Of a stretch of 64,000 bases of DNA, positions 5,670-64,000 are shown piece after piece. The notes below the pieces were generated by a model. That model searched no databases, was not told the DNA's origin, and was given only the letters and a program-made list of their open reading frames with translations. Source of the stretch: Ranitomeya imitator (taxonomy: Eukaryota). How positions within the stretch are numbered: position 1 is the stretch's first letter; every line of letters begins with the position of its first letter. The DNA lies in the NCBI RefSeq assembly GCF_032444005.1, contig NC_091288.1, positions 187,240,001-187,304,000 of the forward strand, written 5' to 3'. Made by a program: the position numbers and the translations under genes.

Positions 5670-5697
5670 GCTGCAGCCCCTGTTCTGTTACCACAAA

Positions 5698-9814: not shown

Positions 9815-9817
<3 letters not shown>

Positions 9818-9882
<65 letters not shown>
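9818..9882. repeat. (TA)n microsatellite
   Basis: Pure TA run. A shorter paralogous run lies at 58860-58921. Confidence 0.98.
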
Positions 9883-9887
<5 letters not shown>

Positions 9888-11548: not shown

Positions 11549-11869
<321 letters not shown>

Positions 11870-14800: not shown

Positions 14801-15938
14801 AATATTTTTGGTAAAAAGAGAACAGTTCTAGTCTGGTCTAGATAAGACGTTAAATCGGTGATGATTAGCTGCAGAACAGTTTCACATAGATTTAATATAA
14901 ATGTTATATGGCATAATATATGTTCTGATAATAGGTTTACACAGGACAATTGAGATCACATTAGTCATGATTTTTTTTTATATATCAGATGTCTCCAATT
15001 CTGAGAGGAAATATTGAAAAAAACAACCAAGTAAAAACAGAAAATAAAAAATAAAAAAAGGAAAGAAAAAAATAGATGGACTTAGGTCTTACCAAGTATA
15101 TTAAACGTGCATAATCATGTGTGCGGTCCTATTTATCTCTGTGAGTGGGAAAGGACCATCTATGTCCTAATCCTAAAGACAAAGAAACGGAATACCTAAT
15201 TGTACTAAACTGGTATATCAAGATAGGTGATATTCACAATCAGAAACATCGGGCAGGTGATTGCAATCAGCCCCCGATGTGGATCATCTACTAATGTGCA
15301 ACACGTGTCCCCCCCAATACTCTGCACTTATGGGGTACAGTGATATCACAGGTCAGGGAGGGGGCAGTCAGCGGAGGCCGTCGCCTGTGTTACCCTTCTG
15401 GGTTCTCAGCAGCTCCAGCTCGTCCCCACATCTTACAATCAGCTTCCTGTGCGATAAACATTGGAGTAAAGATCCCTGTGATGGTGACAAGAGCCGGGGA
15501 CAGGAGGAACGAGCTCCCGCAGCAGATTTATCTCCCCGGGTACACAGTGAGGTGCAGATCGGGAGGACGGCGGCGATGATCCCGGGATATTCTCTCCGCT
15601 CTTTCCCGGCATCTCTGCTAGTGACGGCTACAAATGGCCGGTGGAGATGTTGGAGAAGGGGAGGCGACGGAGGAAGCGCGCTCTGCTGTCTGGTGTTAGC
15701 CGGTAAAGGGCTTTTATCCCGGGCAGGGAAACACAAGGGGAGAGCGGAGCTTAACCCGGACTCAGCTGGGAGGAGGCGGGGCCTGTGTCCAGTGTCAGCC
15801 AATAGAAGCTCAGGACGGTGCAGCTCAGCAGCCAATCAGTGCGCAGTAAGCCTGTACATATAACAGGCGCCTCCAGCTCCGGCCTCAGTATTTTCCTTCC
15901 TGTCAAGAAGTATTTTCGTTTTGCTTCTGCAGCACATG

Positions 15939-16574
15939 ATGGCAGAGACCGCGCCAGCCGCCGCTCCACCTCCCGCAGAACCGGCCGCCAAATCCAAGAA
16001 GCAGCCGAAGAAATCCGCCGCCAAGAAGAGCAATAAACCCTCCGGCCCCAGCGTCTCCGAGCTGATCGTGAAAGCCGTGTCCGCCTCCAAGGAGCGCAGC
16101 GGGGTGTCTCTGGCCGCCCTGAAGAAGGCTCTGTCTGCCGGAGGATACGATGTAGAGAAGAACAACAGCCGCCTGAAGCTGGCCGTCAGGTCTCTGGTCA
16201 CCAAGGGCGCCCTCCTCCAGGTGAAGGGCAGCGGCGCCTCCGGGTCCTTCAAGCTGAACAAGAAGCAGGAGACGAAGGACAAAGTGGCCAAGAAGAAGCC
16301 AGCAGCTGCGGCCAAACCCAAGAAACCCGCTGCTGCCAAGAAAGCCGCCAAATCTCCGAAGAAGCCCAAAAAGGCTCCGACCGCGGCCAAGAAGAGCCCG
16401 AAAAAGGCCAAGAAGCCCGCAGCTGCCAAGAAAGCGGCCAAGAGCCCCAAGAAGCCGAAAGCCGCTCCCAAGCCCAAGAAGGTGACGAAGAGTCCGGCTA
16501 AGAAGGCGGCCAAACCCGCCAAGAGTCCGGCTAAGAAGGCTGCGAAAGCCAAGAAGCCCGCGGCTAAGAAATAA
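15939..16574 (+). CDS. H1: Linker histone H1
   Basis: Same protein as 5034-5669; stem-loop GGCTCTTATAAGAGCC at 16603-16618. Confidence 0.98.
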
Positions 16575-16618
16575 GCTGCAGCCCCTGTTCTGTTACCACA
16601 AAGGCTCTTATAAGAGCC

Positions 16619-19600
16619 ACCACCTCCTCCCCGCAGAGCTGTATGATCAGTGCCACCACCTCCTCCCCGCAAAGCTGTATGATCAGTGCCATCACCTCCT
16701 CCCCGCAGAGCTGTATGATCAGTGCCACCACCTCCTCCCCGCAGAGCTGTATGATCAGTGCCACCACCTCCTCCCCGCAGAGCTGTATGATCAGTGCCAC
16801 CACCTCCTCCCCGCAGAGCTGTATGATCAGTGCCACCACCTCCTCCCCGCAGAGCTGTATGATCAGTGCCACCACCTCCTCCCCGCAGAGCTGTATGATC
16901 AGAGCCATCACCTCCTCCCCGCAGAGCTGTATGATCAGAGCCATCACCTTTTCCCCGCAGAGCTGTATGATCAGAGCCACCTTCTCCACGCAGAGCTGTA
17001 TGATCAGTGCCACCACCTCCTCCTCGCAGAGCTGTATGATCAGAGCCACCACCTCCTCCCCGCAGAGCTGTATGATCAGAGCCATCACCTCCCCGCAGAG
17101 CTGTATGATCAGAGCCATCGCCTTCTCCCCGCAGAGCTGTATGATCAGTGCCACCACCTCCTCGCAGAGCTGTATGATCAGTGCCACCTTCTCCCCGCAG
17201 AGCTGTATGATCAGAGCCATCACCTTCTCCTCGCAGAGCTGTATGATCAGTGCCACCACCTCCTCGCCGAGCTGTATGATCAGTGCCACCTTCTCCCCGC
17301 AGAGCTGTATGATCAGAGCCATCACCTTCCCGCAGAGCTGTATGATCAGAGCCATCACCTTCCCGCAGAGCTGTATGATCAGTGCCACCACCTCCTCGCA
17401 GAGCTGTATGATCAGTGCCACCTTCTCCCCGCAGAGCTGTATGATCAGAGCCACCACCTCCTCCCCGCAGAGCTGTATGATCAGAGCCATCACCTCCTCC
17501 CCGCAGAGCTGTATGATCAGTGACACCACCTCCTCGCAGAGCTGTATGATCAGTGCCACCTTCTCCCCGCAGAGCTGTATGATCAGAGCCATCACCTTCT
17601 CCCCGCAGATCTGTATGATCAGAGCCACCTTCTCCCCGCAGAGCTGTATGATCAGAGCCACCTTCTCCCCGCAGAGCTGTATGATCAGAGCCACCACCTC
17701 CTCCACGCAGAGCTGTATGATCAGAGCCACCACCTCCTCCCCGCAGAGCTGTATGATCAGTGCCACCACCTCCTCGCAGAGCTGTATGATCAGAGCCACC
17801 TTCTCCCCGCAGAGCTGTATGATCAGAGCCATCACCTTCTCCCCGCAGAGCTGTATGATCAGAGCCACCTTCTCCCCGCAGAGCTGTATGATCAGTGCCA
17901 CCACCTCCTCGCAGAGCTGTATGATCAGTGCCACCTTCTCCCCGCAGAGCTGTATGATCAGAGCCATCACCTTCCCGCAGAGCTGTATGATCAGAGCCAT
18001 CACCTTCCCGCAGAGCTGTATGATCAGTGCCACCACCTCCTCGCAGAGCTGTATGATCAGTGCCACCTTCTCCCCGCAGAGCTGTATGATCAGAGCCACC
18101 ACCTCCTCCCCGCAGAGCTGTATGATCAGAGCCATCACCTCCTCCCCGCAGAGCTGTATGATCAGTGACACCACCTCCTCGCAGAGCTGTATGATCAGTG
18201 CCACCTTCTCCCCGCAGAGCTGTATGATCAGAGCCATCACCTTCTCCCCGCAGATCTGTATGATCAGAGCCACCTTCTCCCCGCAGAGCTGTATGATCAG
18301 AGCCACCTTCTCCCCGCAGAGCTGTATGATCAGAGCCACCACCTCCTCCACGCAGAGCTGTATGATCAGAGCCACCACCTCCTCCCCGCAGAGCTGTATG
18401 ATCAGTGCCACCACCTCCTCGCAGAGCTGTATGATCAGAGCCACCTTCTCCCCGCAGAGCTGTATGATCAGAGCCATCACCTTCTCCCCGCAGAGCTGTA
18501 TGATCAGAGCCACCTTCTCCCCGCAGAGCTGTATGATCAGTGCCACCACCTCCTCGCAGAGCTGTATGATCAGAGCCACCACCTCCTCCCCGCAGAGCTG
18601 TATGATCAGAGCCATCACCTCCCCGCAGAGCTGTATGATCAGAGCCATCACCTTCTCTCCGCAGAGCTGTATGATCAGAGCCACCTTCTCCCCGCAGAGC
18701 TGTATGACCAGAGCCATCACCTTCTCCCCGCAGAGCTGTATGATCAGTGCCACCACCTCCTCGCAGAGCTGTATGATCAGAGCCACCTTCTCCCCGCAGA
18801 GCTGTATGATCAGAGCCATCACCTTCTCCCCGCAGAGCTGTATGATCAGAGCCACCTTCTCCCCGCAGAGCTGTATGATCAGTGCCACCACCTCCTCGCA
18901 GAGCTGTATGATCAGAGCCACCACCTCCTCCCCGCAGAGCTGTATGATCAGAGCCATCACCTCCCCGCAGAGCTGTATGATCAGAGCCATCACCTTCTCT
19001 CCGCAGAGCTGTATGATCAGAGCCACCTTCTCCCCGCAGAGCTGTATGATCAGAGCCATCACCTTCTCCTCGCAGAGCTGTATGATCAGTGCCACCACCT
19101 CCTCGCAGAGCTGTATGATCATTGCCACCACCTCCTCCCCGCAGAGCTGTATGATCAGTGCCACCACCTCCTCTCCGCAGAGCTGTATGATCAGAGCCAT
19201 CACCTCCTCCCCGCAGAGCTGTATGATCAGAGCCATCACCTTTTCCCCGCAGAGCTGTATGATCAGAGCCACCTTCTCCACGCAGAGCTGTATGATCAGT
19301 GCCACCACCTCCTCCTCGCAGAGCTGTATGATCAGAGCCACCACCTCCTCCCCGCAGAGCTGTATGATCAGAGCCACCTTCTCCCCGCAGAGCTGTATGA
19401 TCAGAGCCACCACCTCCTCCACGCAGAGCTGTATGATCAGTGCCACCACCTCCTCCTCGCAGAGCTGTATGATCAGAGCCACCACCTCCTCCCCGCAGAG
19501 CTGTATGATCAGAGCCATCACCTCCCCGCAGAGCTGTATGATCAGAGCCATCGCCTTCTCCCCGCAGAGCTGTATGATCAGTGCCACCACCTCCTCGCAG

Positions 19601-22600
19601 AGCTGTATGATCAGTGCCACCTTCTCCCCGCAGAGCTGTATGATCAGAGCCATCACCTTCTCCTCGCAGAGCTGTATGATCAGTGCCACCACCTCCTCGC
19701 CGAGCTGTATGATCAGTGCCACCTTCTCCCCGCAGAGCTGTATGATCAGAGCCATCACCTTCCCGCAGAGCTGTATGATCAGAGCCATCACCTTCCCGCA
19801 GAGCTGTATGATCAGTGCCACCACCTCCTCGCAGAGCTGTATGATCAGTGCCACCTTCTCCCCGCAGAGCTGTATGATCAGAGCCACCACCTCCTCCCCG
19901 CAGAGCTGTATGATCAGAGCCATCACCTCCTCCCCGCAGAGCTGTATGATCAGTGACACCACCTCCTCGCAGAGCTGTATGATCAGTGCCACCTTCTCCC
20001 CGCAGAGCTGTATGATCAGAGCCATCACCTTCTCCCCGCAGATCTGTATGATCAGAGCCACCTTCTCCCCGCAGAGCTGTATGATCAGAGCCACCTTCTC
20101 CCCGCAGAGCTGTATGATCAGAGCCACCACCTCCTCCACGCAGAGCTGTATGATCAGAGCCACCACCTCCTCCCCGCAGAGCTGTATGATCAGTGCCACC
20201 ACCTCCTCGCAGAGCTGTATGATCAGAGCCACCTTCTCCCCGCAGAGCTGTATGATCAGAGCCATCACCTTCTCCCCGCAGAGCTGTATGATCAGAGCCA
20301 CCTTCTCCCCGCAGAGCTGTATGATCAGTGCCACCACCTCCTCGCAGAGCTGTATGATCAGAGCCACCACCTCCTCCCCGCAGAGCTGTATGATCAGAGC
20401 CATCACCTCCCCGCAGAGCTGTATGATCAGAGCCATCACCTTCTCTCCGCAGAGCTGTATGATCAGAGCCACCTTCTCCCCGCAGAGCTGTATGATCAGA
20501 GCCATCACCTTCTCCTCGCAGAGCTGTATGATCAGAGCCACCTTCTCCCCGCAGAGCTGTATGATCAGTGCCACCACCTCCTCGCAGAGCTGTATGATCA
20601 GAGCCACCTTCTCCCCGCAGAGCTGTATGATCAGAGCCACCTTCTCCCCGCAGAGCTGTATGATCAGAGCCACCTTCTCCCCGCAGAGCTGTATGATCAG
20701 AGCCATCACCTCCCCGCAGAGCTGTATGATCAGAGCCATCACCTTCTCCCCGCAGAGCTGTATGATCAGAGCCACCTTCTCCCCGCAGAGCTGTATGATC
20801 AGTGCCACCACCTCCTCGCCGAGCTGTATGATCAGTGCCACCTTCTCCCCGCAGAGCTGTATGATCAGAGCCATCACCTTCCCGCAGAGCTGTATGATCA
20901 GTGCCACCACCTCCTCGCAGAGCTGTATGATCAGTGCCACCTTCTCCCCGCAGAGCTGTATGATCAGAGCCACCACCTCCTCGCAGAGCTGTATGATCAG
21001 AGCCATCACCTTCTCCCCGCAGAGCTGTATGATCAGAGCCATCACCTTCTCCCCGCAGAGCTGTATGATCAGAGCCACCTTCTCCCCGCAGAGCTGTATG
21101 ATCAGTGCCACCACCTCCTCGCAGAGCTGTATGATCAGAGCCACCACCTCCTCCCCGCAGAGCTGTATGATCAGAGCCATCACCTCCCCGCAGAGCTGTA
21201 TGATCAGAGCCATCACCTTCTCTCCGCAGAGCTGTATGATCAGAGCCACCTTCTCCCCGCAGAGCTGTATGATCAGTGCCATCACCTCCTCCCCGCAGAG
21301 CTGTATGATCAGTGCCACCACCTCCTCCCCGCAGAGCTGTATGATCAGTGCCACCACCTCCTCCCCGCAGAGCTGTATGATCAGTGCCACCACCTCCTCC
21401 CCGCAGAGCTGTATGATCAGTGCCACCACCTCCTCCCCGCAGAGCTGTATGATCAGAGCCATCACCTCCTCCCCGCAGAGCTGTATGATCAGAGCCATCA
21501 CCTTCTCCCCGCAGAGCTGTATGATCAGAGCCACCTTCTCCACGCAGAGCTGTATGATCAGTGCCACCACCTCCTCCTCGCAGAGCTGTATGATCAGAGC
21601 CACCACCTCCTCCCCGCAGAGCTGTATGATCAGAGCCATCACCTCCCCGCAGAGCTGTATGATCAGTGCCACCACCTCCTCGCAGAGCTGTATGATCAGT
21701 GCCACCTTCTCCCCGCAGAGCTGTATGATCAGAGCCATCACCTTCTCCTCGCAGAGCTGTATGATCAGTGCCACCACCTCCTCGCCGAGCTGTATGATCA
21801 GTGCCACCTTCTCCCCGCAGAGCTGTATGATCAGAGCCATCACCTTCCCGCAGAGCTGTATGATCAGAGCCATCACCTTCCCGCAGAGCTGTATGATCAG
21901 TGCCACCACCTCCTCGCAGAGCTGTATGATCAGTGCCACCTTCTCCCCGCAGAGCTGTATGATCAGAGCCACCACCTCCTCCCCGCAGAGCTGTATGATC
22001 AGAGCCATCACCTCCTCCCCGCAGAGCTGTATGATCAGTGACACCACCTCCTCGCAGAGCTGTATGATCAGTGCCACCTTCTCCCCGCAGAGCTGTATGA
22101 TCAGAGCCATCACCTTCTCCCCGCAGATCTGTATGATCAGAGCCACCTTCTCCCCGCAGAGCTGTATGATCAGAGCCACCTTCTCCCCGCAGAGCTGTAT
22201 GATCAGAGCCACCACCTCCTCCACGCAGAGCTGTATGATCAGAGCCACCACCTCCTCCCCGCAGAGCTGTATGATCAGTGCCACCACCTCCTCGCAGAGA
22301 TGTATGATCAGAGCCACCTTCTCCCCGCAGAGCTGTATGATCAGAGCCATCACCTTCTCCCCGCAGAGCTGTATGATCAGAGCCACCTTCTCCCCGCAGA
22401 GCTGTATGATCAGTGCCACCACCTCCTCGCAGAGCTGTATGATCAGAGCCACCACCTCCTCCCCGCAGAGCTGTATGATCAGAGCCATCACCTCCCCGCA
22501 GAGCTGTATGATCAGAGCCATCACCTTCTCTCCGCAGAGCTGTATGATCAGAGCCACCTTCTCCCCGCAGAGCTGTATGATCAGAGCCATCACCTTCTCC

Positions 22601-39317: not shown

Positions 39318-40004
<687 letters not shown>

Positions 40005-40994
40005 ATCTGCCCCGACAGCGACCACAACACAAAGGCTCTTTTCAGAGCCACCAAATCCTCCCACAAATGAGCCGAGTCCTGAACGGTCCCTCTTCTGCGC
40101 GTATTCTCCGTGTAGGAAGCGCAGGCACGGCCGATCAGTTAATAGACGGCGGCTGCTGCTTCAGATATTGTAGGTGATCAGCGATATTAGTTATTAAAGG
40201 ACGGGGTAAAGTGTGTACAGTGCACAGCCCAGGTCTGTGGTTGTGGATATGCGGTTCCTGTACAGCACAAAGTAAATGGGGTGGATCTGCAGGAACGCGG
40301 TCACTAAGGAGTTAATGGAGTAAAAGTAATCGGTGATTGGTCGGTTCCTGAGCACGGTTCTTTAGGTTGATGTTTTGTGGTCATTTACCGATCCGGTGGA
40401 TTTGAAATTGCTGCTCGCGCTCCCGAGGATCATAACCGATCACAATCTGCTGTCGCACGCGCTGGGTCCTAGTGCCGCCTTCTCAGTCCTGCGGCTTTAG
40501 GTTGTTTTCTATTTTTCTGATCGGAGATCTCTGCGCTTAGTTTCTGTTAATAACCTCATTTGTCCCCCAGATCGGTTAAGGCGCCTTTATGTGAATCTAT
40601 TCTGCCTGACACTGATCTGAGCAGATCCCTCCGTGTGCTGCGATGGTCGCTACAGATCACATTTGTGGTGGGTCGTTATGTAATTCTGGAATATTTGACT
40701 TTTCCCATCTTCTCCAGGGCTGGACCCGCAGGGGGACTGGTTACATGCAGCTCCCTGCTCTGAGGGACTGGTAATGGCCGGCACCACGTGTAATGATGAG
40801 TGACTGCCGGGGAGCAGATGAGTTCTCTGTAGATCATTGTCCCTAAAATATACTTTTATTCTACTTTCTAACATTTGGCAGAAGCTGGAAACTAGCAACA
40901 GAAATAACAATGAAAAAAATCTAGATGACCAACAGATCGAGCAGCGGCGCCGAGATTAGAAGAATAGAGAAGCGGGAAAATAAGAGCACAATAA

Positions 40995-41505
<511 letters not shown>

Positions 41506-42016
41506 TTGTGTTCTGTCCTCACAACCCAAAGGCTCTTATCAGAGCCGCCCACATCTCAGTGAGAGGCTGCACCTGACTGCTCGGACCTGACTTCTGCGCT
41601 CCCTTGGTGCTATCGCTGTAATGCTGGTACAATGCTCATCAGTGCCGACTTCTCCGCATACTACGGGGTCGGAAATCTTACATTGTGGCGGATGGTAATT
41701 CTGACACTGCTCCGCGGTCCCGGTACCGTCCTCTGATGCTGTGTGGGCGGATGGTTCTGTTGCTCTTATCAGAGCCGCCACATTGATAAGAACAAGCTGT
41801 GATCTCCGCTGTGTGATGCGGCATCTGCTGTAATATGCGCCACCGGCGGCTAAACCGGAAGATCATCGGATGGAATATCCACAGCTATATACATTTATAT
41901 TTCAGCACTGGGCACTTACTGCACTATACCGCTGTATCACAGTGTGCAGCACTATATGGGGGTACAAAGAACTGTTCGGAAAGATGCATTACTGTATAGA
42001 GGTGATTATTCGTATT

Positions 42017-42073
42017 CACATGTAAAGCGCCATGGAATATATGGCGCTATAAAAATGTATAATAATAATAAAA
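42017..42073 (+). mobile_element. Short L2-type 3' tail fragment
   Basis: tgtaaagcgccatggaatatatggcgctat...aataataataa (hairpin plus (AAT)n), resembling the L2 tail at 55308. Copies near 45777 and 49573. Confidence 0.55.
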
Positions 42074-43077
42074 AATATTTCTACATGGAAGGTTCACAGC
42101 TGTATGTGGGGATTTCTGCATTACAGGGGGCATACAGCGGTATACAGATGGGCACTGCATTGTTATATGGAGGTATACAGAATTACACGGGGTTCCCAGC
42201 ACCATCTGGAGACATTACTGCAATATACGGAGTGTAACATGTCGGCGCTGCACTGTAACTGTCTGCATAATGTGGCACAATCATTTGTCAGTAAGTTGTA
42301 GTATATGGGGGTACTGTGCACTATACAGATGAATAGCAGCACTATATTGGAGTATACTGCAGCACATGAAGGGTAAACAGAGCTACATGAACACATAGAG
42401 CACTATATGAGGGTGCACTGCGGTATATGGCGCTTCACAGCACTATTTAGATGTATTCAGCATTATATGTGCTTTACAGCGCTATATGGAGGGTGCTGAA
42501 AAGCGAAATATCAGCTGCAGAACCACCAATGAGCTGCAGTGGGCGGAGCGTAAGACGGTCCCATTGGTCACATGACTTCATCACCCAATAGCACGGCGGT
42601 CTGACAGCAGCGCTCATCTGCATGGCCGGGCTATCACTTCCTCCCCGCAGAGCTGTATGATCAGAGCCATCACTTCCTCCTCGCAGAGCTGTATGATCAG
42701 TTCTCGGACTTGTAATGATTTTAATATAACAGACGCTGGTCGCAGTTTCAGGATGGGGGGTGGGGTGATCTGATGATAATGCGGGAGCTGCAGTGTACAG
42801 CGCTATATACGGGGACATTTCAGCACAGATACACCAGCTGCTCCAGCAGCGGCAAATAATCAATAAGCGCCTCAGAAAAGTGGGGTCGAGATAACACTGG
42901 TATAGCCCCCCTATTAATATTACCCAGATGTCTCGGGTTATAAGGACAACTCCAATAAACATACAAAACCAAAGAAAGGAGTGAACCAGTCCCACAAAAC
43001 ATAATACAAATCAATAATGCTTTATTATTACAGAAAATTATATCCACAAAAATACATAAAACACATAAATCCAGTAA

Positions 43078-43764
<687 letters not shown>

Positions 43765-44902
43765 ATCTGCCCCGACAGCGACCACAACACAAAGGCTCTT
43801 TTCAGAGCCACCAAATCCTCCCACAAATGAGCCGAGTCCTGAACGGTCCCTCTTCTGCGCGTATTCTCCGTGTAGGAAGCGCAGGCACGGCCGATCAGTT
43901 AATAGACGGCGGCTGCTGCTTCAGATATTGTAGGTGATCAGCGATATTAGTTATTAAAGGACGGGGTAAAGTGTGTACAGTGCACAGCCCAGGTCTGTGG
44001 TTGTGGATATGCGGTTCCTGTACAGCACAAAGTAAATGGGGTGGATCTGCAGGAACGCGGTCACTAAGGAGTTAATGGAGTAAAAGTAATCGGTGATTGG
44101 TCGGTTCCTGAGCACGGTTCTTTAGGTTGATGTTTTGTGGTCATTTACCGATCCGGTGGATTTGAAATTGCTGCTCGCGCTCCCGAGGATCATAACCGAT
44201 CACAATCTGCTGTCGCACGCGCTGGGTCCTAGTGCCGCCTTCTCAGTCCTGCGGCTTTAGGTTGTTTTCTATTTTTCTGATCGGAGATCTCTGCGCTTAG
44301 TTTCTGTTAATAACCTCATTTGTCCCCCAGATCGGTTAAGGCGCCTTTATGTGAATCTATTCTGCCTGACACTGATCTGAGCAGATCCCTCCGTGTGCTG
44401 CGATGGTCGCTACAGATCACATTTGTGGTGGGTCGTTATGTAATTCTGGAATATTTGACTTTTCCCATCTTCTCCAGGGCTGGACCCGCAGGGGGACTGG
44501 TTACATGCAGCTCCCTGCTCTGAGGGACTGGTAATGGCCGGCACCACGTGTAATGATGAGTGACTGCCGGGGAGCAGATGAGTTCTCTGTAGATCATTGT
44601 CCCTAAAATATACTTTTATTCTACTTTCTAACATTTGGCAGAAGCTGGAAACTAGCAACAGAAATAACAATGAAAAAAATCTAGATGACCAACAGATCGA
44701 GCAGCGGCGCCGAGATTAGAAGAATAGAGAAGCGGGAAAATAAGAGCACAATAAGCGGGAAATTCAAAATTAGCAACTGTTCTGTGCTCAACCAATCAGA
44801 GACTAAAGGGAGGAGCTAACTGTAAATTCAGTACCAGAAATCTCGCCCCGGAAACGCGTCATCTCTGCGGTTCTCGCTCCGGTCCGCTCACTCTCTATAT
44901 AA

Positions 44903-45265
<363 letters not shown>

Positions 45266-46873
45266 TTGTGTTCTGTCCTCACAACCCAAAGGCTCTTATC
45301 AGAGCCGCCCACATCTCAGTGAGAGGCTGCACCTGACTGCTCGGACCTGACTTCTGCGCTCCCTTGGTGCTATCGCTGTAATGCTGGTACAATGCTCATC
45401 AGTGCCGACTTCTCCGCATACTACGGGGTCGGAAATCTTACATTGTGGCGGATGGTAATTCTGACACTGCTCCGCGGTCCCGGTACCGTCCTCTGATGCT
45501 GTGTGGGCGGATGGTTCTGTTGCTCTTATCAGAGCCGCCACATTGATAAGAACAAGCTGTGATCTCCGCTGTGTGATGCGGCATCTGCTGTAATATGCGC
45601 CACCGGCGGCTAAACCGGAAGATCATCGGATGGAATATCCACAGCTATATACATTTATATTTCCGCACTGGGCACTTACTGCACTATACCGCTGTATCAC
45701 AGTGTGCAGCACTATATGGGGGTACAAAGAACTGTTCGGAAAGATGCATTACTGTATAGAGGTGATTATTCGTATTCACATGTAAAGCGCCATGGAATAT
45801 ATGGCGCTATAAAAATGTATAATAATAATAAAAAATATTTCTACATGGAAGGTTCACAGCTGTATGTGGGGATTTCTGCATTACAGGGGGCATACAGCGG
45901 TATACAGATGGGCACTGCATTGTTATATGGAGGTATACAGAATTACACGGGGTTCCCAGCACCATCTGGAGACATTACTGCAATATACGGAGTGTAACAT
46001 GTCGGCGCTGCACTGTAACTGTCTGCATAATGTGGCACAATCATTTGTCAGTAAGTTGTAGTATATGGGGGTACTGTGCACTATACAGATGAATAGCAGC
46101 ACTATATTGGAGTATACTGCAGCACATGAAGGGTAAACAGAGCTACATGAACACATAGAGCACTATATGAGGGTGCACTGCGGTATATGGCGCTTCACAG
46201 CACTATTTAGATGTATTCAGCATTATATGTGCTTTACAGCGCTATATGGAGGGTGCTGAAAAGCGAAATATCAGCTGCAGAACCACCAATGAGCTGCAGT
46301 GGGCGGAGCGTAAGACGGTCCCATTGGTCACATGACTTCATCACCCAATAGCACGGCGGTCTGACAGCAGCGCTCATCTGCATGGCCGGGCTATCACTTC
46401 CTCCCCGCAGAGCTGTATGATCAGAGCCATCACTTCTTCCCCGCAGAGATGTATGATCAGAGCCATCACTTCCTCCTCGCAGAGCTGTATGATCAGTTCT
46501 CGGACTTGTAATGATTTTAATATAACAGACGCTGGTCGCAGTTTCAGGATGGGGGGTGGGGTGATCTGATGATAATGCGGGAGCTGCAGTGTACAGCGCT
46601 ATATACGGGGACATTTCAGCACAGATACACCAGCTGCTCCAGCAGCGGCAAATAATCAATAAGCGCCTCAGAAAAGTGGGGTCGAGATAACACTGGTATA
46701 GCCCCCCTATTAATATTACCCAGATGTCTCGGGTTATAAGGACAACTCCAATAAACATACAAAACCAAAGAAAGGAGTGAACCAGTCCCACAAAACATAA
46801 TACAAATCAATAATGCTTTATTATTACAGAAAATTATATCCACAAAAATACATAAAACACATAAATCCAGTAA

Positions 46874-47560
<687 letters not shown>

Positions 47561-48698
47561 ATCTGCCCCGACAGCGACCACAACACAAAGGCTCTTTTCA
47601 GAGCCACCAAATCCTCCCACAAATGAGCCGAGTCCTGAACGGTCCCTCTTTTGCGCGTATTCTCCGTGTAGGAAGCGCAGGCACGGCCGATCAGTTAATA
47701 GACGGCGGCTGCTGCTTCAGATATTGTAGGTGATCAGCGATATTAGTTATTAAAGGACGGGGTAAAGTGTGTACAGTGCACAGCCCAGGTCTGTGGTTGT
47801 GGATATGCGGTTCCTGTACAGCACAAAGTAAATGGGGTGGATCTGCAGGAACGCGGTCACTAAGGAGTTAATGGAGTAAAAGTAATCGGTGATTGGTCGG
47901 TTCCTGAGCACGGTTCTTTAGGTTGATGTTTTGTGGTCATTTACCGATCCGGTGGATTTGAAATTGCTGCTCGCGCTCCCGAGGATCATAACCGATCACA
48001 ATCTGCTGTCGCACGCGCTGGGTCCTAGTGCCGCCTTCTCAGTCCTGCGGCTTTAGGTTGTTTTCTATTTTTCTGATCGGAGATCTCTGCGCTTAGTTTC
48101 TGTTAATAACCTCATTTGTCCCCCAGATCGGTTAAGGCGCCTTTATGTGAATCTATTCTGCCTGACACTGATCTGAGCAGATCCCTCCGTGTGCTGCGAT
48201 GGTCGCTACAGATCACATTTGTGGTGGGTCGTTATGTAATTCTGGAATATTTGACTTTTCCCATCTTCTCCAGGGCTGGACCCGCAGGGGGACTGGTTAC
48301 ATGCAGCTCCCTGCTCTGAGGGACTGGTAATGGCCGGCACCACGTGTAATGATGAGTGACTGCCGGGGAGCAGATGAGTTCTCTGTAGATCATTGTCCCT
48401 AAAATATACTTTTATTCTACTTTCTAACATTTGGCAGAAGCTGGAAACTAGCAACAGAAATAACAATGAAAAAAATCTAGATGACCAACAGATCGAGCAG
48501 CGGCGCCGAGATTAGAAGAATAGAGAAGCGGGAAAATAAGAGCACAATAAGCGGGAAATTCAAAATTAGCAACTGTTCTGTGCTCAACCAATCAGAGACT
48601 AAAGGGAGGAGCTAACTGTAAATTCAGTACCAGAAATCTCGCCCCGGAAACGCGTCATCTCTGCGGTTCTCGCTCCGGTCCGCTCACTCTCTATATAA

Positions 48699-49061
<363 letters not shown>

Positions 49062-50081
49062 TTGTGTTCTGTCCTCACAACCCAAAGGCTCTTATCAGAG
49101 CCGCCCACATCTCCGTGAGAGGCTGCACCTGACTGCTCGGATCTGACTTCTGCTCTCCCCTGGTGCTATCGCTGTAATGCTGGTACAATGCTCATCAGTG
49201 CCGACTTCTCCGCATACTACGGGGTCGGAAATCTTACATTGTGGCGGATGGTAATTCTGACACTGCTCCGCGGTCCCGGTACCGTCCTCTGATGCTGTGT
49301 GGGCGGATGGTTCTGTTGCTCTTATCAGAGCCGCCACATTGATAAGAACAAGCTGTGATCTCCGCTGTGTGATGCGGCATCTGCTGTAATATGCGCCACC
49401 GGCGGCTAAACCGGAAGATCATCGGATGGAATATCCACAGCTATATACATTTATATTTCCGCACTGGGCACTTACTGCACTATACCGCTGTATCACAGTG
49501 TGCAGCACTATATGGGGGTACAAAGAACTGTTCGGAAAGATGCATTACTGTATAGAGGTGATTATTCGTATTCACATGTAAAGCGCCATGGAATATATGG
49601 CGCTATAAAAATGTATAATAATAATAAAAAATATTTCTACATGGAAGGTTCACAGCTGTATGTGGGGATTTCTGCATTACAGGGGGCATACAGCGGTATA
49701 CAGATGGGCACTGCATTGTTATATGGAGGTATACAGAATTACACGGGGTTCCCAGCACCATCTGGAGACATTACTGCAATATACGGAGTGTAACATGTCG
49801 GCGCTGCACTGTAACTGTCTGCATAATGTGGCACAATCATTTGTCAGTAAGTTGTAGTATATGGGGGTACTGTGCACTATACAGATGAATAGCAGCACTA
49901 TATTGGAGTATACTGCAGCACATGAAGGGTAAACAGAGCTACATGAACACATAGAGCACTATATGAGGGTGCACTGCGGTATATGGCGCTTCACAGCACT
50001 ATTTAGATGTATTCAGCATTATATGTGCTTTACAGCGCTATATGGAGGGTGCTGAAAAGCGAAATATCAGCTGCAGAACCA

Positions 50082-50637
<556 letters not shown>

Positions 50638-50741
50638 TCGGCTCCGTGCTCTGCTCCTCACCCCAAACACTTAGATAGGAGAAAAAAGGATCATCCCCGC
50701 GCTGCCGCATGAAGAATTTCAAAAATTGTAGAGGTTTCAAC

Positions 50742-50797
50742 GTGGTTTATTCTACGCGTTTCAGGGTTCAGGTGACCCCTTCATCAGGACATACCAC
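50742..50797 (-). ncRNA. Mirror-image hammerhead ribozyme
   Basis: Exact reverse complement of 50816-50871 within the palindrome. Confidence 0.72.
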
Positions 50798-50815
50798 AAA
50801 TATTGTACAATATTT

Positions 50816-50871
50816 GTGGTATGTCCTGATGAAGGGGTCACCTGAACCCTGAAACGCGTAGAATAAACCAC
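50816..50871 (+). ncRNA. Type I hammerhead ribozyme (PLE minimal type)
   Basis: CTGATGA 50826-50832, stem II AGGG/CCCT, GAAA 50851-50854, palindromic stem III ACGCGT, GUA cleavage triplet ending at 50860, stem I gtggt/accac. Confidence 0.75.
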
Positions 50872-51116
50872 GTTGAAACCTCTACAATTTTTGAAATTCT
50901 TCATGCGGCAGCGCGGGGATGATCCTTTTTTCTCCTATCTAAGTGTGTGCTTCAATCAGGTCCTGCACTGACCTGTGGATCTGCAGCAGCCGCCATTAAT
51001 ATATGTCCTTCCTTCAATCTCACCAGGTGAGTAGTTCTCTTGGTGGGCAACTTTGTGTAACGTTTGATAAGACCCTATTTGCGCTTTTGTGTCTCCCTCT
51101 TTTCCCTCACCCCAAA

Positions 51117-51132
51117 GGCTCTTCTAAGAGCC
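51117..51132 (+). terminator. H2B 3' stem-loop (displaced about 480 nt from the stop codon)
   Basis: GGCTCT-TCTA-AGAGCC followed by ACCCA. Confidence 0.9.
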
Positions 51133-52112
51133 ACCCACAGCCTCGCTATAAGAGCCACCCACAGCCTCGCTATAAGAGCCACCCACAGCCTCGCTATAAG
51201 AGCCACCCGCAGCCTCGCTATAAGAGCCACCCGCAGCCTCGCTATAAGAGCCACCCGCAGCCTCACTATAAGAGCCACCCGCACCCTCACTATAAGAGCC
51301 CCCCACAGCCTCACTATAAGAGCCACCCACAGCCTCGCTATAAGAGCCACCCACAGCCTCGCTATAAGAGCCACCCACAGCCTCGCTATAAGAGCCACCC
51401 GCAGCCTCGCTATAAGAGCCACCCGCAGCCTCGCTATAAGAGCCACCCGCAGCCTCGCTATAAGAGCCACCCGCACCCTCACTATAAGAGCCCCCCACAG
51501 CCTCACTATAAGAGCCACCCACAGCCTCACTATAAGAGCCCCCCACAGCCTCGCTATAAGAGCCCCCCACAGCCTCGCTATAAGAGCCACCCACAGCCTC
51601 GCTATAAGAGCCCCCCACAGCCTCGCTATAAGAGCCCCCCACAGCCTCACTATAAGAGCCCCCCACAGCCTCACTATAAGAGCCACCCACAGCCTCACTA
51701 TAAGAGCCCCCCACAGCCTCACTATAAGAGCCCCCCACAGCCTCACTATAAGAGCCACCCACAGCCTCACTATAAGAGCCCCCCACAGCCTCACTATAAG
51801 AGCCACCCACAGCCTCACTATAAGAGCCCCCCACAGCCTCACTATAAGAGCCACCCACACCCTCACTATAAGAGCCCCCCACAGCCTCACTATAAGAGCC
51901 CCCCACAGCCTCACTATAAGAGCCCCCCACAGCCTCACTATAAGAGCCCCCCACAGCCTCACTATAAGAGCCCCCCACAGCCTCACTATAAGAGCCACCC
52001 ACAGCCTCGCTATAAGAGCCACCCACACCCTCGCTATAAGAGCCCCCCACACCCTCACTATAAGAGCCCCCCACACCCTCAGAGCCACCCACAGCCTCAC
52101 TATAAGAGCTGC
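51126..52112 (+). repeat. H2B-3'-end minisatellite, 24-bp unit, about 41 copies
   Basis: AAGAGCC(A/C)CCC(A/G)CA(G/C)CCTC(G/A)CTAT tandem from the stem-loop arm to a terminal AAGAGCTGC at 52104-52112. Length 978 = 40x24+18. Confidence 0.98.
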
Positions 52113-55307: not shown

Positions 55308-58300
55308 TATTATTATTTATTATATTTGTTCCATGGCGCTTTACATGTGAGGAGGGGTATACATAATGAAAACAAGTACAATAATCTTAAACAATACAAG
55401 TCATAACTGGTACAGGAGGAATGAGGACCCTGCCCACGAAGGCTCACAATCTACAAGGGATGGGTGAGAATACAGTAGGTGAGGGTAGAGATGGTCATGC
55501 AGCGGTTTGGTCGATCGGTGGTAACTGCAGGTTGTAGGCTTGTCTGAAGAGGTGTGTCTTCAGGTTCTTTTTGAAGGTTTCAATGGTAGGCGAGAGTCTG
55601 ATGTGTTGTGGTAGAGGGTTCCAGAGTAGGGGTGATACGCGAGAGAAATCTTGTATACGATTGTGGGAAGAGGAGATAAGAGGGGAGTAGAGTAGGAGAT
55701 CTTGTGAGGATCGGAGGTTGCGAGTAGGTAAGTACCGGGAGACGAGGTCACAGATGTATGGAGGAGACAGGCTGTGGATGGCTTTGTACGTTAGGGTTTT
55801 ATAGTGGAGTCTCTGGGCAATGGGGGGCCAGTGAAGGGATTGACAGAGGGGAGAGGCCGGGGAATAGGGGGGGACAGGTGGATTAGTCGGGCAGCAGAGT
55901 TTAAAATAGATTGGAGGGGTGCGAGAGTGTTAGAGGGGAGGCCACAGAGCAGGAGGTTGCAGTAGTCAAGGCGAGAGATGAGGGCATGGACTAGGGTTTT
56001 TGCAGATTCATGGTTGAGGAATGAACGGATTCGGGAAATATTTTTGAGTTGAAGTCGGCAGGAAGTGGAAAGGGCTTGGATATGTGGTTTGAAGGAGAGA
56101 TCAGCATCAAGGATTACCCCGAGGCAGCGAGCTTGTGGGACTGGGGAGAGTGGGCAGCCATTTACTGTAATGGATAGGTTCGTTGGGGGGGGGTCGCTTG
56201 AGATGGGGGAAAGATGATGAATTCTGTTTTGTCCATGTTAAGTTTCAGAAATCTAGCGGAGAAGGATGAAATAGTGGACAGACATTGAGGGATTCTGGTT
56301 AGAAGGGAGGTGATATCTGGTCCAGAGATGTAGATCTGTGTGTCGTCAGCATACAGGTGATACTGAAAGCCATGAGATTCTATGAGCTGTCCCAGGCCAA
56401 AGGTGTAAATGGAGAAGAGCAAGGGCCCAAGGACTGAACCTTGTGGGACTCCGACAGATAGGGGGCGAGGTGAGGAGGTGGTGTGTGAGTGGGAGACGCT
56501 GAATGTCCGGTCTGTTAGGTATAATGAGATCCAGGATAGGGCCAAGTCTGCGATGCCAAGGGAGGAGAGGGTTTGTAATAATAGGGAATGGTCCACTGTG
56601 TCAAAGGCAGCCGACAGGTCGAGGAGGACAGAGTAGTGTCGCTTGCTCTTGGCGGTTAAGAGGTCATTGGTGACTTTAGTTAGGGCAGTTTCGGTGGAAT
56701 GGTGTGACCGGAAGCCAGATTGTAGGCGGTCAAAGAGGGAGCAAGAAGAGAGATGGGAGGACAGTTCAAGGTAGACGTGTTGTTCCAGTAGTTTTGAGGC
56801 AAAGGGGAGAAGTGATATAGGGCGATAGCTAGATACAGAGGATGGGTCAAGAGAGGGCTTTTTGAGGATAGGTGTGATTGAGGCATGTTTAAAGCTTGAG
56901 GGGAAAACACCAGTTGTTAGTGATAGGTTGAAGAGATGGGTTAGGGTTGGGATGAAGATTGTGGTGAGGTGTGGGATGGGAGTGGGTCAAGTGCACAGGT
57001 GGTGAGATGCGATCTTGAGAGTAGAGTGGAGAGTTGATCTTCTGTAATGGTGGAGAAGTTGGTTTTGGAGGTGGAGGGCTGGGAAATCGGGAGGAAGAGC
57101 TCTGGGGGTTTTTGACCAAAACTGTCTCTAATACTATCAATCTTCTGCTTGAAAAATGAGGCAAAGTCTTCAGCAGAGATAAGTGGGGAGGGAGGAGGTG
57201 CTGGGGGACGGAGGAGAGAATTGAAGGTGTTGAATAACTGTTTAGGGTTGTGAGAGAGAGAGGAGATGAGAAGTAGGTTTGTTTAGCTGTGGCGAGTGTG
57301 GTCTTGAAAGTAGTGAGGGACTGTTTGAATGCGATGAAGTGCTCGTTAGAGTGGGATCTTTTCCATCTGCGCTCAGCAGCCCTGGAAGCTCGCCTCAGTT
57401 CTTTGGTCAGGCTGGTGTGCCAGGGCTGTCTATTGATTTTGCGAGCTTTGGTATGTGTAAGTGGGGCAGCAGATTCCAAAGCTAGAGCTATTGTGGTGTT
57501 ATATAGAGCAGCAGCGTCATCCGCATTGTGTATGGAACTTATGCCTGTGAGGGGGAGGAGGGATTCAGAGAATGAGTGTAGGTCAAGATGTTTAATATTT
57601 CTGCGAGGGTGTGAAAGTTTGTGGGGTGGGGATTGTAGACATGGAGTGGAGAGAGATGAGAATGTGAGAAGGTTGTGGTCAGAGAGTGGAAGAGGTGAGT
57701 TAGAGGTGTTAGATAGAGAGCAGAGGCGGGTGAAGATGAGGTCCAATGTGTGACCGTCTTTGTGAGTGGCTGCAGAAGACCATTGAGTGAGGCCGAAGGA
57801 GGAAGTGAGAGTTAGAAGTTTAGTGGCAGCTGAGAGGGAAGTGTCAATGGGGATGTTGAAGTCACCCATGATGATAGTGGGGATGTCCGCAGAAAGGAAA
57901 TGAAGTAGCCAGGTGGTGAAGTGGTCAAAGAAGATGGTGGCTGGCCCTGGGGGGCGGTAAATGACAGCCAGTTGGAGGTTGGTGGGGGAATAGATGCGCA
58001 CAGAGTGCACCTCAAAGGAAGGGAGGGTAACAGAGGGTGGCAGTGGGATTGGGGTGAAGGAACAGTTATCTGACAGGAGAAAACCAACTCCTCCGCCATG
58101 TTTGCTGCTGGGGCGGGGTGTGTGGGAAAGGTGGAAGCCACCATAAGAGAGTGCAGCAGGGGAGACTGTGTCAGAAGGGGTGAGCAAGGTTTCGGTGATG
58201 GCGAGGAAGGAAAGTTTGGTAGTAACAAAGAGATCATGGATGTAGGAGAGCTTGTTGCAGACAGAGTGGGCGTTCCACAGAGCTCCTGTTAGTGGGACTG

Positions 58301-62626: not shown

Positions 62627-64000
62627 ACCACCTCCTCCCCGCAGAGCTGTATGATCAGTGCCACCACCTCCTCCCCGCAGAGCTGTATGATCAGTGCCAT
62701 CACCTCCTCCCCGCAGAGCTGTATGATCAGTGCCACCACCTCCTCCCCGCAGAGCTGTATGATCAGTGCCACCACCTCCTCCCCGCAGAGCTGTATGATC
62801 AGAGCCATCACCTCCCCGCAGAGCTGTATGATCAGAGCCATCACCTCCCCGCAGAGCTGTATGATCAGAGCCATCGCCTTCTCCCCGCAGAGCTGTATGA
62901 TCAGTGCCACCACCTCCTCGCAGAGCTGTATGATCAGTGCCACTTTCTCCCCGCAGAGCTGTATGATCAGAGCCATCACCTTCTCCTCGCAGAGCTGTAT
63001 GATCAGAGCCACCTTCTCCCCGCAGAGCTGTATGATCAGTGCCACCACCTCCTCGCAGAGCTGTATGATCAGAGCCACCTTCTCCCCGCAGAGCTGTATG
63101 ATCAGAGCCATCACCTCCCCGCAGAGCTGTATGATCAGAGCCATCACCTTCTCCCCACAGAGCTGTATGATCAGAGCCACCTTCTCCCCGCAGAGCTGTA
63201 TGATCAGTGCCACCACCTCCTCGCAGAGCTGTATGATCAGAGCCACCTTCTCCCCGCAGAGCTGTATGATCAGAGCCATCACCTTCCCGCAGAGCTGTAT
63301 GATCAGTGTCACCACCTCCTCGCAGAGCTGTATGATCAGTGTCACCACCTCCTCGTCGCAGAGCTGTATGATCAGAGCCACCTTCTCCCCGCAGAGCTGT
63401 ATGATCAGAGCCATCACTTCCTCACCGCAGAGCTGTATGATCAGAGCCATCACCTCCCCGCAGAGCTGTATGATCAGAGGTATCACCTTCTCCCCGAAGA
63501 GCTGTATGATCAGTGCCACCACCTCCTCGCAGAGCTGTATGATCAGAGCCACCTTCTCCCCGCAGAGCTGTATGATCAGAGCCATCACCTTCTCCCCGCA
63601 GAGCTGTATGATCAGAGCCACCTTCTCCCAGCAGAGCTGTATGATCAGTGCCACCACCTCCTCGCAGAGCTGTATGATCAGAGCCACCACCTCCTCCCCG
63701 CAGAGCTGTATGATCAGAGCCATCACCTCGCCGCAGAGCTGTATGATCAGAGCCATCACCTTCTCTCCGCAGAGCTGTATGATCAGAGCCACCTTCTCCC
63801 CGCAGAGCTGTATGATCAGTGCCATCACCTCCTCGCAGAGCTGTATGATCAGAGCCACCTTCTCCCAGCAGAGCTGTATGATCAGAGCCATCACCTCCTC
63901 CCCGCAGAGCTGTATGATCAGAGCCATCACCTCCTCCCCGCAGAGCTGTATGATCAGTGACACCACCTCCTCCCCGCAGAGCTGTATGATCAGAGCCATC
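62627..64000 (+). repeat. H1-3'-end satellite array 3 (runs off the window)
   Basis: Same 33/36-bp unit starting right after the stem-loop. Confidence 0.98.

What the first reader, a model, noticed from the sequence alone, without database searches (positions are those of the whole stretch)
50656..51116. Perfect 280-bp palindrome with twin hammerhead ribozymes inserted between the H2B stop codon and its stem-loop
Seen: 50667-50946 is a spacer-less perfect inverted repeat centred on GTAC (50805-50808). Each arm has a hammerhead core (CTGATGA...GAAAC-GC-GTA). The insert is flanked by a 12-bp duplication (cctcaccccaaa), and removing it restores a normal ~30-nt UTR. A sense AATAAA lies at 50862-50867 and an AG|GTGAGT site near 51026. 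Established: Penelope-like elements carry minimal type I hammerheads with palindromic stem III and often have inverted terminal segments. Inference: this H2B transcript has competing fates before the stem-loop: a 140-bp dsRNA hairpin (Dicer/ADAR substrate that would also mask the ribozyme), self-cleavage at 50860, polyadenylation, or normal processing. The DNA could also extrude a cruciform.
Basis: partly seen in the sequence, partly recalled or inferred. Interest (0 to 1): 0.8.

Follow-up and report, generated by a model that had tools for sequence, protein, structure and literature searches.

The report
Fold-back hammerhead retroelement in H2B tail
A young, truncated copy of a very abundant frog mobile element that carries a hammerhead ribozyme motif landed just in front of the stem-loop of one histone H2B gene and was folded back on itself as it went in; the kind is known and this frog genome has many similar insertions.

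Summary
50667-50946 is a perfect, spacer-less 280-bp palindrome. A 12-bp target duplication brackets a 437-bp insert, and removing the insert restores a 30-nt H2B 3' UTR ending in a normal stem-loop. A complete hammerhead core lies at 50826-50860 (+) and mirrored at 50753-50787 (-).

Corrections:
- The two hammerheads are on opposite strands. Any one transcript has one ribozyme plus its perfect antisense, so they are not twins in cis.
- The palindrome is not native to the element. Contigs from three public runs continue upstream of 50803 with other sequence, and a mirrored loose end appears in a fourth. This copy is therefore 5'-truncated and inverted at a native 8-nt palindrome, TTGTACAA.
- Rfam's hammerhead models give no hit. 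The motif does fit the published dimer-dependent amphibian and Penelope-type architecture, and it is very rare by chance.

The family is very high-copy and young, and many copies share a 3' end at about 51104. This is a Penelope-type, TSD-flanked, 5'-truncated insertion with an inverted arm, which is a known kind. The scan had already noted at least six similar palindromic hammerhead insertions in this genome.

No indexed public run holds this junction.

The parts
50257..50637 (+). Histone H2B coding region (126 codons; 50358-50632 masked as N), stop codon TGA at 50635-50637
   Evidence: ORF list; sequence
50656..50667 (+). Left copy of the 12-bp target-site duplication CCTCACCCCAAA (original 3' UTR end, 5' flank of the stem-loop)
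   Evidence: the repeat finder family D2
50668..50806 (-). Inverted arm: reverse complement of element positions 50807-50945. It carries the hammerhead motif on the minus strand (50753-50787).
50803..50810 (.). Inversion joint. TTGTACAA is an 8-nt palindrome native to the element, because canonical copies match down to 50803 and then continue with ...CCTATGACTC upstream.
   Evidence: read laying loose ends at 50803 (X1, X3, X7) and mirrored at 50810 (X16)
50807..51104 (+). Direct, 5'-truncated element copy (298 bp), ending at the family's shared 3' boundary
   Evidence: contigs X1 50803-51097 and X7 50803-51104; 12 X16 contigs diverge after 51104
50815..50872 (+). Hammerhead motif. Helix I is 50815-50825 with 50861-50872 (10 pairs, two bulges). 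Core CUGAUGA is 50826-50832. Helix II is 50833-50850. GAAA is 50851-50854. The palindromic loop CGCG is 50855-50858, U16.1 is 50859 and A17 is 50860. The predicted cut lies between 50860 and 50861.
   Evidence: sequence; pair list and energies; descriptor scan; no Rfam hit
50862..50867 (+). AATAAA, which is part of the 3' strand of helix I (native to the element)
51024..51032 (+). CAG|GTGAGT, a consensus splice-donor-like 9-mer 24 nt after an ATG at 51003. PLE pLTRs are known to carry introns, but its use here is untested.
   Evidence: ORF 51003..; no homologue for the 34-aa peptide
51105..51116 (+). Right copy of the 12-bp target-site duplication
51112..51156 (+). Histone 3' stem-loop (GGCTCTTCTAAGAGCC at 51117-51132) with intact CCAAA 5' flank and ACCCA 3' flank
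   Evidence: Rfam RF00032, 32.4 bits (gathering score 34)

Best explanation
This is one young insertion, 50668-51104 (437 bp) with a 12-bp TSD, of a very abundant non-coding retroelement that carries a type I hammerhead motif. The element is either a 5'-truncated Penelope-like element (pLTR-type fragment) or a PLE-mobilised non-autonomous relative (retrozyme-like).

Proposed mechanism (inferred):
- Reverse transcription was primed at the nicked target immediately 5' of the H2B stem-loop.
- It copied the element RNA from its usual 3' boundary (about 51104) back to about 50803-50807.
- At a native palindromic octamer, TTGTACAA, the nascent cDNA either snapped back on itself (GTAC loop) or annealed to a second cDNA primed from the other target strand.
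- About 139 nt were copied in the opposite sense before joining to the upstream target end.
- This gives rc(X)-X-Y with a spacer-less perfect palindrome.

The palindrome is a by-product of integration. It is not a device of the element or the host. For the host it is most likely a neutral or mildly damaging hit in one copy of a highly repeated histone gene. The stem-loop and its flanks stay intact, but the 3' UTR grows from 30 to 479 nt (50638-51116). In H2B-sense RNA the single sense hammerhead would be paired to its antisense arm, so self-cleavage is unlikely.

Shown: the anatomy, the copy number, the native continuation upstream and the shared 3' end. Inferred: the snap-back or dual-priming step, and all consequences for the RNA.
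For: - Palindrome and TSD.
- Excising the insert restores ...CCTCACCCCAAA|GGCTCTTCTAAGAGCCACCCA; stem-loop 32.4 bits.
- Hammerhead core, helices and 1-bp helix III with a CGCG loop.
- A general descriptor finds only these two sites in 64 kb, against 0.003 per 64 kb in 300 random sequences.
- The architecture matches published descriptions of amphibian and metazoan type I and PLE hammerheads (PMC7229834; PMC4209133).
- Family evidence: word depth in DNA run X16 is 2,500-20,000 over the element against about 35 in the flank bin. 152 of 327 contigs are at least 99% alike. Contigs from X1, X3 and X7 continue upstream of 50803 with the same foreign 30 nt. Twelve X16 contigs diverge after 51104.
- A variant that is rare in the family (A at 50903, where nearly all copies have T) is present in both arms, since the arms are perfectly complementary. 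This fits the arms being copied from one template.
- PLE insertions are typically 5'-truncated with an adjacent inverted 5'-truncated copy (PMC8557442). A purified Poseidon PLE protein nicks and extends both target strands (PMC11167929).
- The scan noted at least six other TSD-flanked palindromic hammerhead insertions in this genome.
- Hairpin energy -318 kcal/mol, z = -27.9.
Against: - No Rfam hammerhead family matches, even at E<=10 on a 93-nt slice.
- The monomer hammerhead fold (-7.8 to -9.1 kcal/mol) is not the MFE (-14.9), and the arm folds no better than shuffles (z = -0.23).
- No covariation evidence is possible, because the copies are nearly identical.
- No RT or GIY-YIG ORF and no tandem arrangement is seen in this copy. 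The 34-aa ORF at the element's end has no real homologue. The link to PLEs therefore rests on anatomy and literature.
- The specific junctions are not seen in any indexed public run. Contigs over the H2B side were absent, possibly filtered, so the insertion is confirmed only by the assembly itself.
- The target is C-rich, unlike the AT-rich preference reported for one PLE.
Confidence: 0.8

Rival explanations
1. Functional reading. The insert reprogrammes this H2B transcript. The hammerhead cuts at 50860, or AATAAA at 50862 polyadenylates it, or the 143-bp hairpin feeds Dicer or ADAR. All of these compete with stem-loop processing.
For: All the sequence signals exist. The hairpin is extremely stable. 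The insert lies inside the transcribed 3' UTR, upstream of an intact stem-loop. The 2026 preprint notes that exon-overlapping retrozymes tend to lie in 3' UTRs.
Against: No RNA run holds the junction words; the best share is 0.33-0.50. Hammerheads with a 1-bp helix III are weak as monomers and need a second sense copy, and here the only partner in cis is the antisense. AATAAA is buried in the same duplex. This is one copy among very many histone genes (scan notes).
Confidence: 0.08
2. Assembly artefact. The palindrome comes from a fold-back (missing-adapter or duplex) long read or from a mis-join inside a repeat.
For: Perfect spacer-less palindromes are a known artefact class. No independent run was found to carry the junction or the centre. 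PLE inverted structures are known to trouble assemblies.
Against: The palindrome is internal and only 280 bp long. Unique element sequence follows it, and an exact 12-bp TSD brackets the whole insert so that excision restores a canonical histone 3' end. A fold-back read would invert the flanking H2B sequence, not create a TSD. The scan noted several similar TSD-flanked palindromic inserts elsewhere in this genome. X16 has other contigs that switch from one arm to the other (table 5).
Confidence: 0.05
3. A DNA transposon, fold-back element or MITE whose inverted repeats are its own termini.
For: It has long inverted repeats and a TSD.
Against: The inverted repeats are adjacent at one end. They are followed by 158 bp of unique sequence and are not at both termini. 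Canonical copies lack the left arm and run on upstream with other sequence. Copies share a 3' end, and this one is cut short at its 5' end, which is the retroelement pattern. It carries a hammerhead motif as PLEs and retrozymes do.
Confidence: 0.04

Closest known systems
Penelope-like elements (Poseidon/Neptune-type of vertebrates): 5'-truncated copies with an adjacent inverted 5'-truncated copy and a hammerhead in the pLTR
   Same: It has a hammerhead with a tiny palindromic helix III, 5' truncation, an inverted arm abutting the 5' end, a TSD longer than 10 bp, a high copy number and a shared 3' boundary. The (T/A)CTGAC that follows 51104 in many copies may be the short extra 'tail' described for PLEs. 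A consensus splice-donor-like site lies near the 3' end, and PLE pLTRs are known to hold introns.
   Different: No RT or GIY-YIG ORF is present or linked here. The hammerhead is 244 nt from the 3' boundary, not overlapping an ORF start as in Poseidon_Ac. The target is C-rich, not AT-rich. The inversion joint sits on a native 8-nt palindrome and gives a spacer-less perfect palindrome.
Animal non-LTR retrozymes / newt satellite 2 (tandem 170-400-nt units with type I hammerheads; PMC7229834, bioRxiv 10.64898/2026.07.22.740005)
   Same: It is non-coding and abundant in amphibians. It has the same hammerhead style as HHR_Amex1 (single-pair helix III capped by a palindromic tetraloop). It is thought to be mobilised by PLEs, and exonic copies of this class are biased to 3' UTRs.
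   Different: There is no head-to-tail repeat in this copy. A 516-nt contig of the family shows no internal repeat, so the unit is longer than 516 nt or is not tandem. Loop 2 is 10 nt, or helix II is a longer bulged helix, unlike the 4-bp helix plus 6-nt loop of canonical retrozyme hammerheads. The inversion joint is not at the ribozyme cut site, unlike some copies the scan described in this genome.
L1 'twin priming' 5' inversions
   Same: An inverted 5' segment lies next to a direct 3' segment inside one TSD, with microhomology at the joint.
   Different: In twin priming the inverted and direct segments are neighbouring, different parts of the element (this rests on my own knowledge, not on a tool result). 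Here both arms are the same 139 nt. That needs snap-back or two templates.

Membership tests
Hammerhead ribozyme, type I (dimer-dependent metazoan/PLE style) | Conserved core C3 U4 G5 A6 N7 G8 A9, G12 A13 A14, A15.1-U16.1, H17 not G | tested here: met
   CUGAUGA 50826-32, GAAA 50851-54, U 50859, A17 50860
Hammerhead ribozyme, type I (dimer-dependent metazoan/PLE style) | Helix II of at least 4 bp directly between A9 and G12 | tested here: met
   Either AGGG/CCCU (4 bp with a 10-nt loop), or a G.U-started register with one unpaired 5' A giving 6 pairs with a bulge
Hammerhead ribozyme, type I (dimer-dependent metazoan/PLE style) | Helix I formed by the sequences 5' of C3 and 3' of the cut site | tested here: met
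   10 pairs, 50815-25 with 50861-72, with a 1-nt and a 2-nt bulge. The descriptor's requirement of at least 5 pairs was passed.
Hammerhead ribozyme, type I (dimer-dependent metazoan/PLE style) | Short helix III (1-2 bp) capped by a 2-4-nt palindromic loop, allowing an intermolecular helix III | tested here: met
   A-U pair closing CGCG; ACGCGU is a 6-nt palindrome. Criterion taken.
Hammerhead ribozyme, type I (dimer-dependent metazoan/PLE style) | Match to a curated covariance model (Rfam hammerhead families) | tested here: not met
   No hammerhead hit at the gathering score or at E<=10, on the whole window, on 1 kb or on a 93-nt slice
Hammerhead ribozyme, type I (dimer-dependent metazoan/PLE style) | Occurrence beyond chance | tested here: met
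   The descriptor finds only the 2 mirrored sites in 64 kb; 0.003 per 64 kb in 300 first-order Markov sequences
Hammerhead ribozyme, type I (dimer-dependent metazoan/PLE style) | Self-cleavage after H17 | not testable with these tools
   Needs in vitro transcription of monomer and head-to-tail dimer constructs
Penelope-like element insertion / PLE-mobilised non-autonomous element | TSD-flanked, 5'-truncated copies sharing a 3' boundary; dispersed and high-copy | tested here: met
   12-bp TSD. Canonical copies extend upstream of 50803; many contigs diverge after 51104; depth is in the thousands.
Penelope-like element insertion / PLE-mobilised non-autonomous element | Inverted 5'-truncated copy abutting the 5' end | tested here: met
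   Left arm 50668-50806 is the reverse complement of 50807-50945. Criterion from PMC8557442.
Penelope-like element insertion / PLE-mobilised non-autonomous element | Telomerase-like RT plus GIY-YIG endonuclease ORF (autonomous element) | tested here: not met
   Stops in all six frames of 50807-51104, except a 34-codon ORF at the 3' end with no true homologue. This is expected for a truncated or non-autonomous copy. Full-length family members could not be fetched.
Non-LTR retrozyme | Head-to-tail tandem units, each with a hammerhead | tested here: not met
   No direct repeat of the element in this locus. The 516-nt X1 contig has 221 nt unlike the stretch.
Replication-dependent histone 3' end | 16-nt stem-loop with CCAAA 5' flank, ACCCA 3' flank and a downstream purine-rich HDE | tested here: inconclusive
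   RF00032 scores 32.4 bits against a gathering score of 34, and the flanks are intact. The consensus-like HDE AAGAGCTG lies only at 52104-52111, after a 24-bp array whose units carry AAGAGCC.
Fold-back DNA transposon / MITE | Inverted repeats at both termini of every copy | tested here: not met
   The arms are adjacent at one end only, and canonical copies lack the left arm

The most novel reading that the evidence does not exclude
The native octamer TTGTACAA just upstream of the hammerhead may be a preferred snap-back or strand-exchange point for the Penelope-type reverse transcriptase. If so, this family would repeatedly generate spacer-less perfect palindromes. This H2B copy may also be expressed, which would make a natural histone mRNA with a 143-bp perfect dsRNA hairpin between the stop codon and the stem-loop. 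That would be a ready-made test of how SLBP/U7 processing, ADAR and Dicer deal with such an RNA.
Probability: 0.1. Interest if true: 0.5.

Novelty: new member of a known kind. Interest (0 to 1): 0.3.

Why it matters
The finding is mainly a clean, dated snapshot of how Penelope-type retroelements integrate. The TSD is intact, the arms have no mismatches, and the inversion joint can be placed on an 8-nt native palindrome, because canonical copies in public data show what the element looks like without the fold-back. That anatomy bears on an open mechanistic question raised in PMC8557442 and PMC11167929: how do PLEs make inverted 5' copies? It does not reveal a new kind of element or a host function. 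Perfect palindromes of this size are expected to be fragile (my own knowledge), so the locus is also a marker of a very recent event. Its position in a histone 3' UTR is a curiosity, not a regulatory device, unless expression is shown.

Tried and rejected
- Rfam at the gathering score and at E<=10, on the whole window, on 1 kb and on 93 nt, gave no hammerhead. It returned only spurious miRNA-precursor hits caused by the long hairpin.
- Exact-pattern scans for the hammerhead in metagenome and viral contig collections found nothing.
- A full-text search for the motif string in papers found nothing. No supplements are held for the 2014 PLE-hammerhead paper.
- I tested whether the ORF starting at 51003 (34 codons to the element end) is the start of a PLE protein, by analogy with Poseidon_Ac, where RT starts 111-118 nt into the ORF. 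The only hit, P0001, is an unrelated repetitive 1,511-aa protein that matches a 12-residue repeat. The idea is neither supported nor excluded.
The junction query gave no holder above 0.50.
- I rejected the idea that 50807 is a recurrent cDNA stop. Several X16 joints have 'to = 50807', but the reference has no canonical sequence left of the centre, so those alignments would break there anyway.
- BLAST of the element against the window found no other copy.

Full report
**What is in the sequence**

The window is a frog histone gene cluster (H4, H1, H3, H2B and H2A ORFs). Earlier notes of this scan call the species a poison frog. The H2B gene occupies 50257-50637. Most of its coding part is masked as N, and I left that untouched.

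After the stop codon come 30 nt of 3' UTR ending in CCTCACCCCAAA (50656-50667). An insert of 437 bp follows (50668-51104), then the same 12 nt again (51105-51116). Directly after that is GGCTCTTCTAAGAGCC-ACCCA, a histone stem-loop scoring 32.4 bits against Rfam Histone3, whose gathering score is 34. Removing the insert and one repeat copy leaves a normal 30-nt UTR with the CCAAA flank that precedes histone stem-loops. The insert therefore went in exactly at the 5' edge of the stem-loop, and the duplication kept the stem-loop's flank intact.

The first 280 bp of the region (50667-50946) are a perfect palindrome with no spacer. With one mismatch, at 50666, it extends to 143-nt arms. The remaining 158 bp (50947-51104) are unique in the window.

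**The hammerhead**

On the + strand, the right arm reads:
- helix I, 5' strand: 50815-50825
- core CUGAUGA: 50826-50832
- helix II: 50833-50850
- GAAA: 50851-50854
- CGCG loop: 50855-50858
- U16.1: 50859
- A17: 50860
- helix I, 3' strand: 50861-50872

All invariant core positions are present. Helix II can be drawn as 4 bp with a 10-nt loop. It can also be drawn as a longer bulged helix with one unpaired 5' nucleotide, which is the Penelope-type look. Helix I has 10 pairs interrupted by two bulges. Helix III is a single A-U pair capped by the palindromic tetraloop CGCG.

Published descriptions match this. [quoted passage not shown] Metazoan type I and PLE hammerheads in general have a tiny palindromic helix III and are active as dimers (PMC4209133).

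A general descriptor finds only this site and its mirror image in the 64-kb window. The descriptor asks for the core, a helix II of at least 4 bp, a 1-bp helix III with a palindromic loop, H17, and a helix I of at least 5 pairs. In 300 random sequences of the same composition it gives 0.003 hits per 64 kb.

Several results count against the motif or leave it unproven:
- Rfam's hammerhead models give nothing, even at E<=10 on a 93-nt slice.
- The monomer hammerhead fold (-7.8 to -9.1 kcal/mol) is not the minimum-energy fold (-14.9).
- The arm folds no better than shuffles.

The last two points are expected for a dimer-dependent motif, but cleavage remains an inference.

One correction to the finding follows from the geometry. 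The left arm is the reverse complement of the right arm, so the second hammerhead is on the other strand. An H2B-sense RNA would contain one ribozyme and its perfect antisense. It would not contain two ribozymes that could dimerise.

**What the element is**

Contigs of four public runs were laid on 50633-51124.
- In a large DNA run (X16) the element has word depths of 2,500-20,000, against about 35 in the flanking bin.
- 152 of 327 contigs are at least 99% alike.
- A low-coverage DNA run labelled as another organism (X7) carries a contig that differs by one letter and one gap.

So this is a very abundant, young family shared by labelled organisms A and B; the run index also lists holders labelled C and D.

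Contigs from X1, X3 and X7 match from 50803 rightwards. To the left they all continue with the same foreign sequence (...CCTGTATACCTATGACTC), and X16 shows the mirror image of this at 50810. This has three consequences:
- The left arm is not part of the canonical element.
- This copy is truncated at its 5' end.
- The octamer TTGTACAA (50803-50810) at the centre is native to the element.

At the other end, twelve X16 contigs and several from the other runs diverge right after 51104, often after a shared (T/A)CTGAC. That marks the family's 3' boundary and coincides with the TSD edge here.

A 516-nt contig has 221 nt upstream that do not match the stretch. The unit is therefore longer than 516 nt or is not tandemly arranged. 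I could not fetch full-length relatives. A 34-codon ORF at the element's end found no true homologue.

The element's features are these:
- a TSD longer than 10 bp
- a shared 3' end
- 5' truncation
- an inverted 5'-truncated copy abutting the 5' end
- a hammerhead
- a consensus splice-donor-like site (51024-51032) near the 3' end

Together they are the published anatomy of Penelope-like element insertions and their non-autonomous relatives (PMC8557442; PMC4209133; bioRxiv 10.64898/2026.07.22.740005).

**How the palindrome arose (inferred)**

cDNA synthesis primed on the nicked bottom strand copied the RNA from about 51104 leftwards. At the native octamer the cDNA 3' end reads TTGTACAA, which is self-complementary. 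Two routes are possible from there:
- It folds back with GTAC as the loop and the reverse transcriptase copies the nascent cDNA.
- It pairs with a second cDNA primed from the other target strand. This is plausible because a purified Poseidon PLE protein nicks and extends both strands (PMC11167929).

Either route gives rc(X)-X-Y with a centre that is itself palindromic, hence no spacer. The left arm stops after 139 nt and is joined to the upstream target with 1-4 nt of overlap.

Our copy carries A at 50903, where nearly all family contigs have T. Because the arms are perfectly complementary, both arms carry this rare variant. That fits copying from one template.

The arms and the TSD have no mismatches, which points to a very recent event.

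**Consequences for H2B**

The stem-loop and its flanks are intact, and the 24-bp array that follows supplies HDE-like AAGAGCC units. A consensus-like AAGAGCTG lies only at 52104-52111.

If this copy is transcribed, the mature mRNA would carry a 3' UTR of 479 nt (50638-51116) dominated by a 143-bp perfect hairpin. The minimum free energy of 50638-51140 is -318 kcal/mol, z = -27.9. That duplex buries the hammerhead and the AATAAA.

I found no evidence of expression. A query in which about half the words span the insert/stem-loop junction found no run above a 0.50 share, and the organism A DNA runs reached only 0.33. No contig covered the H2B side, but the tool filters human-like histone sequence, so that gap proves nothing.

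The specific insertion is thus supported only by the assembly. It may be private or polymorphic. An assembly artefact is unlikely, because a fold-back read would not create a TSD that restores a canonical histone 3' end.

**Comparison and verdict**

The scan has already followed up several hammerhead retrozyme insertions in this genome, some with inverted arms. It has noted at least six other TSD-flanked palindromic hammerhead insertions. This is another member of that known kind.

What this copy adds is a precise inversion joint on a native 8-nt palindrome, 54 nt upstream of the predicted ribozyme cut and not at the cut site itself. Its position also abuts a histone stem-loop. Its classification is supported, but its functional scenario is untested and, for self-cleavage, unlikely.

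Noticed in passing
window 51125-52111: A 24-bp array (41 copies) starts at the 3' arm of the H2B stem-loop and ends in AAGAGCTG (52104-52111), a consensus-like HDE. The unit looks like a duplication between the stem arm AAGAGCC and the HDE. The scan had already noted this (s1-294775).
   Followed up: partly
window 51104-51110 versus contigs: In most family copies the sequence after 51104 is (T/A)CTGAC before flanks diverge. Here the TSD begins CCTCAC at that place, which is 4 of 6 identical. This could be microhomology between the target primer and the RNA 3' end, or the PLE 'tail' being absent from this copy.
   Followed up: no
window 50750-50794 (mirror 50819-50863), run X16, table 5c: One low-depth contig joins 50749 to 50795. 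In element coordinates this removes almost exactly the hammerhead. It may be a hammerhead-deleted variant of the family or an alignment artefact on the palindrome.
   Followed up: no
window 16620-38940, 5711-6438, 62628-64000: Large arrays of a 33-36-bp unit (CCACC...CCCCGCAGAGCTGTATGATCAGAG) lie behind the H1 genes. They are built from histone 3'-processing signals. The scan had already followed these up (s1-294673).
   Followed up: no
window 7078-8986 (-) and 56162-58187 (-): Two copies of a LINE fragment with endonuclease and RT-like ORF pieces (YADD motif). They sit at equivalent places of the large histone repeat. They are not Penelope-like.
   Followed up: no
window 39450-50000: Three near-identical H3-H4 sub-units spaced about 3.76-3.80 kb apart (stem-loops at 40029, 43789 and 47585). 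The middle H3 copy differs by one residue (RKIPFQ where the others have RKLPFQ).
   Followed up: no
window 50754-50859: Rfam miRNA-precursor models (MIR395, mir-2329, mir-547 and others) hit the palindrome centre at E of about 1e-9, but below their gathering scores. These are generic long-hairpin matches, not miRNA genes.
   Followed up: yes
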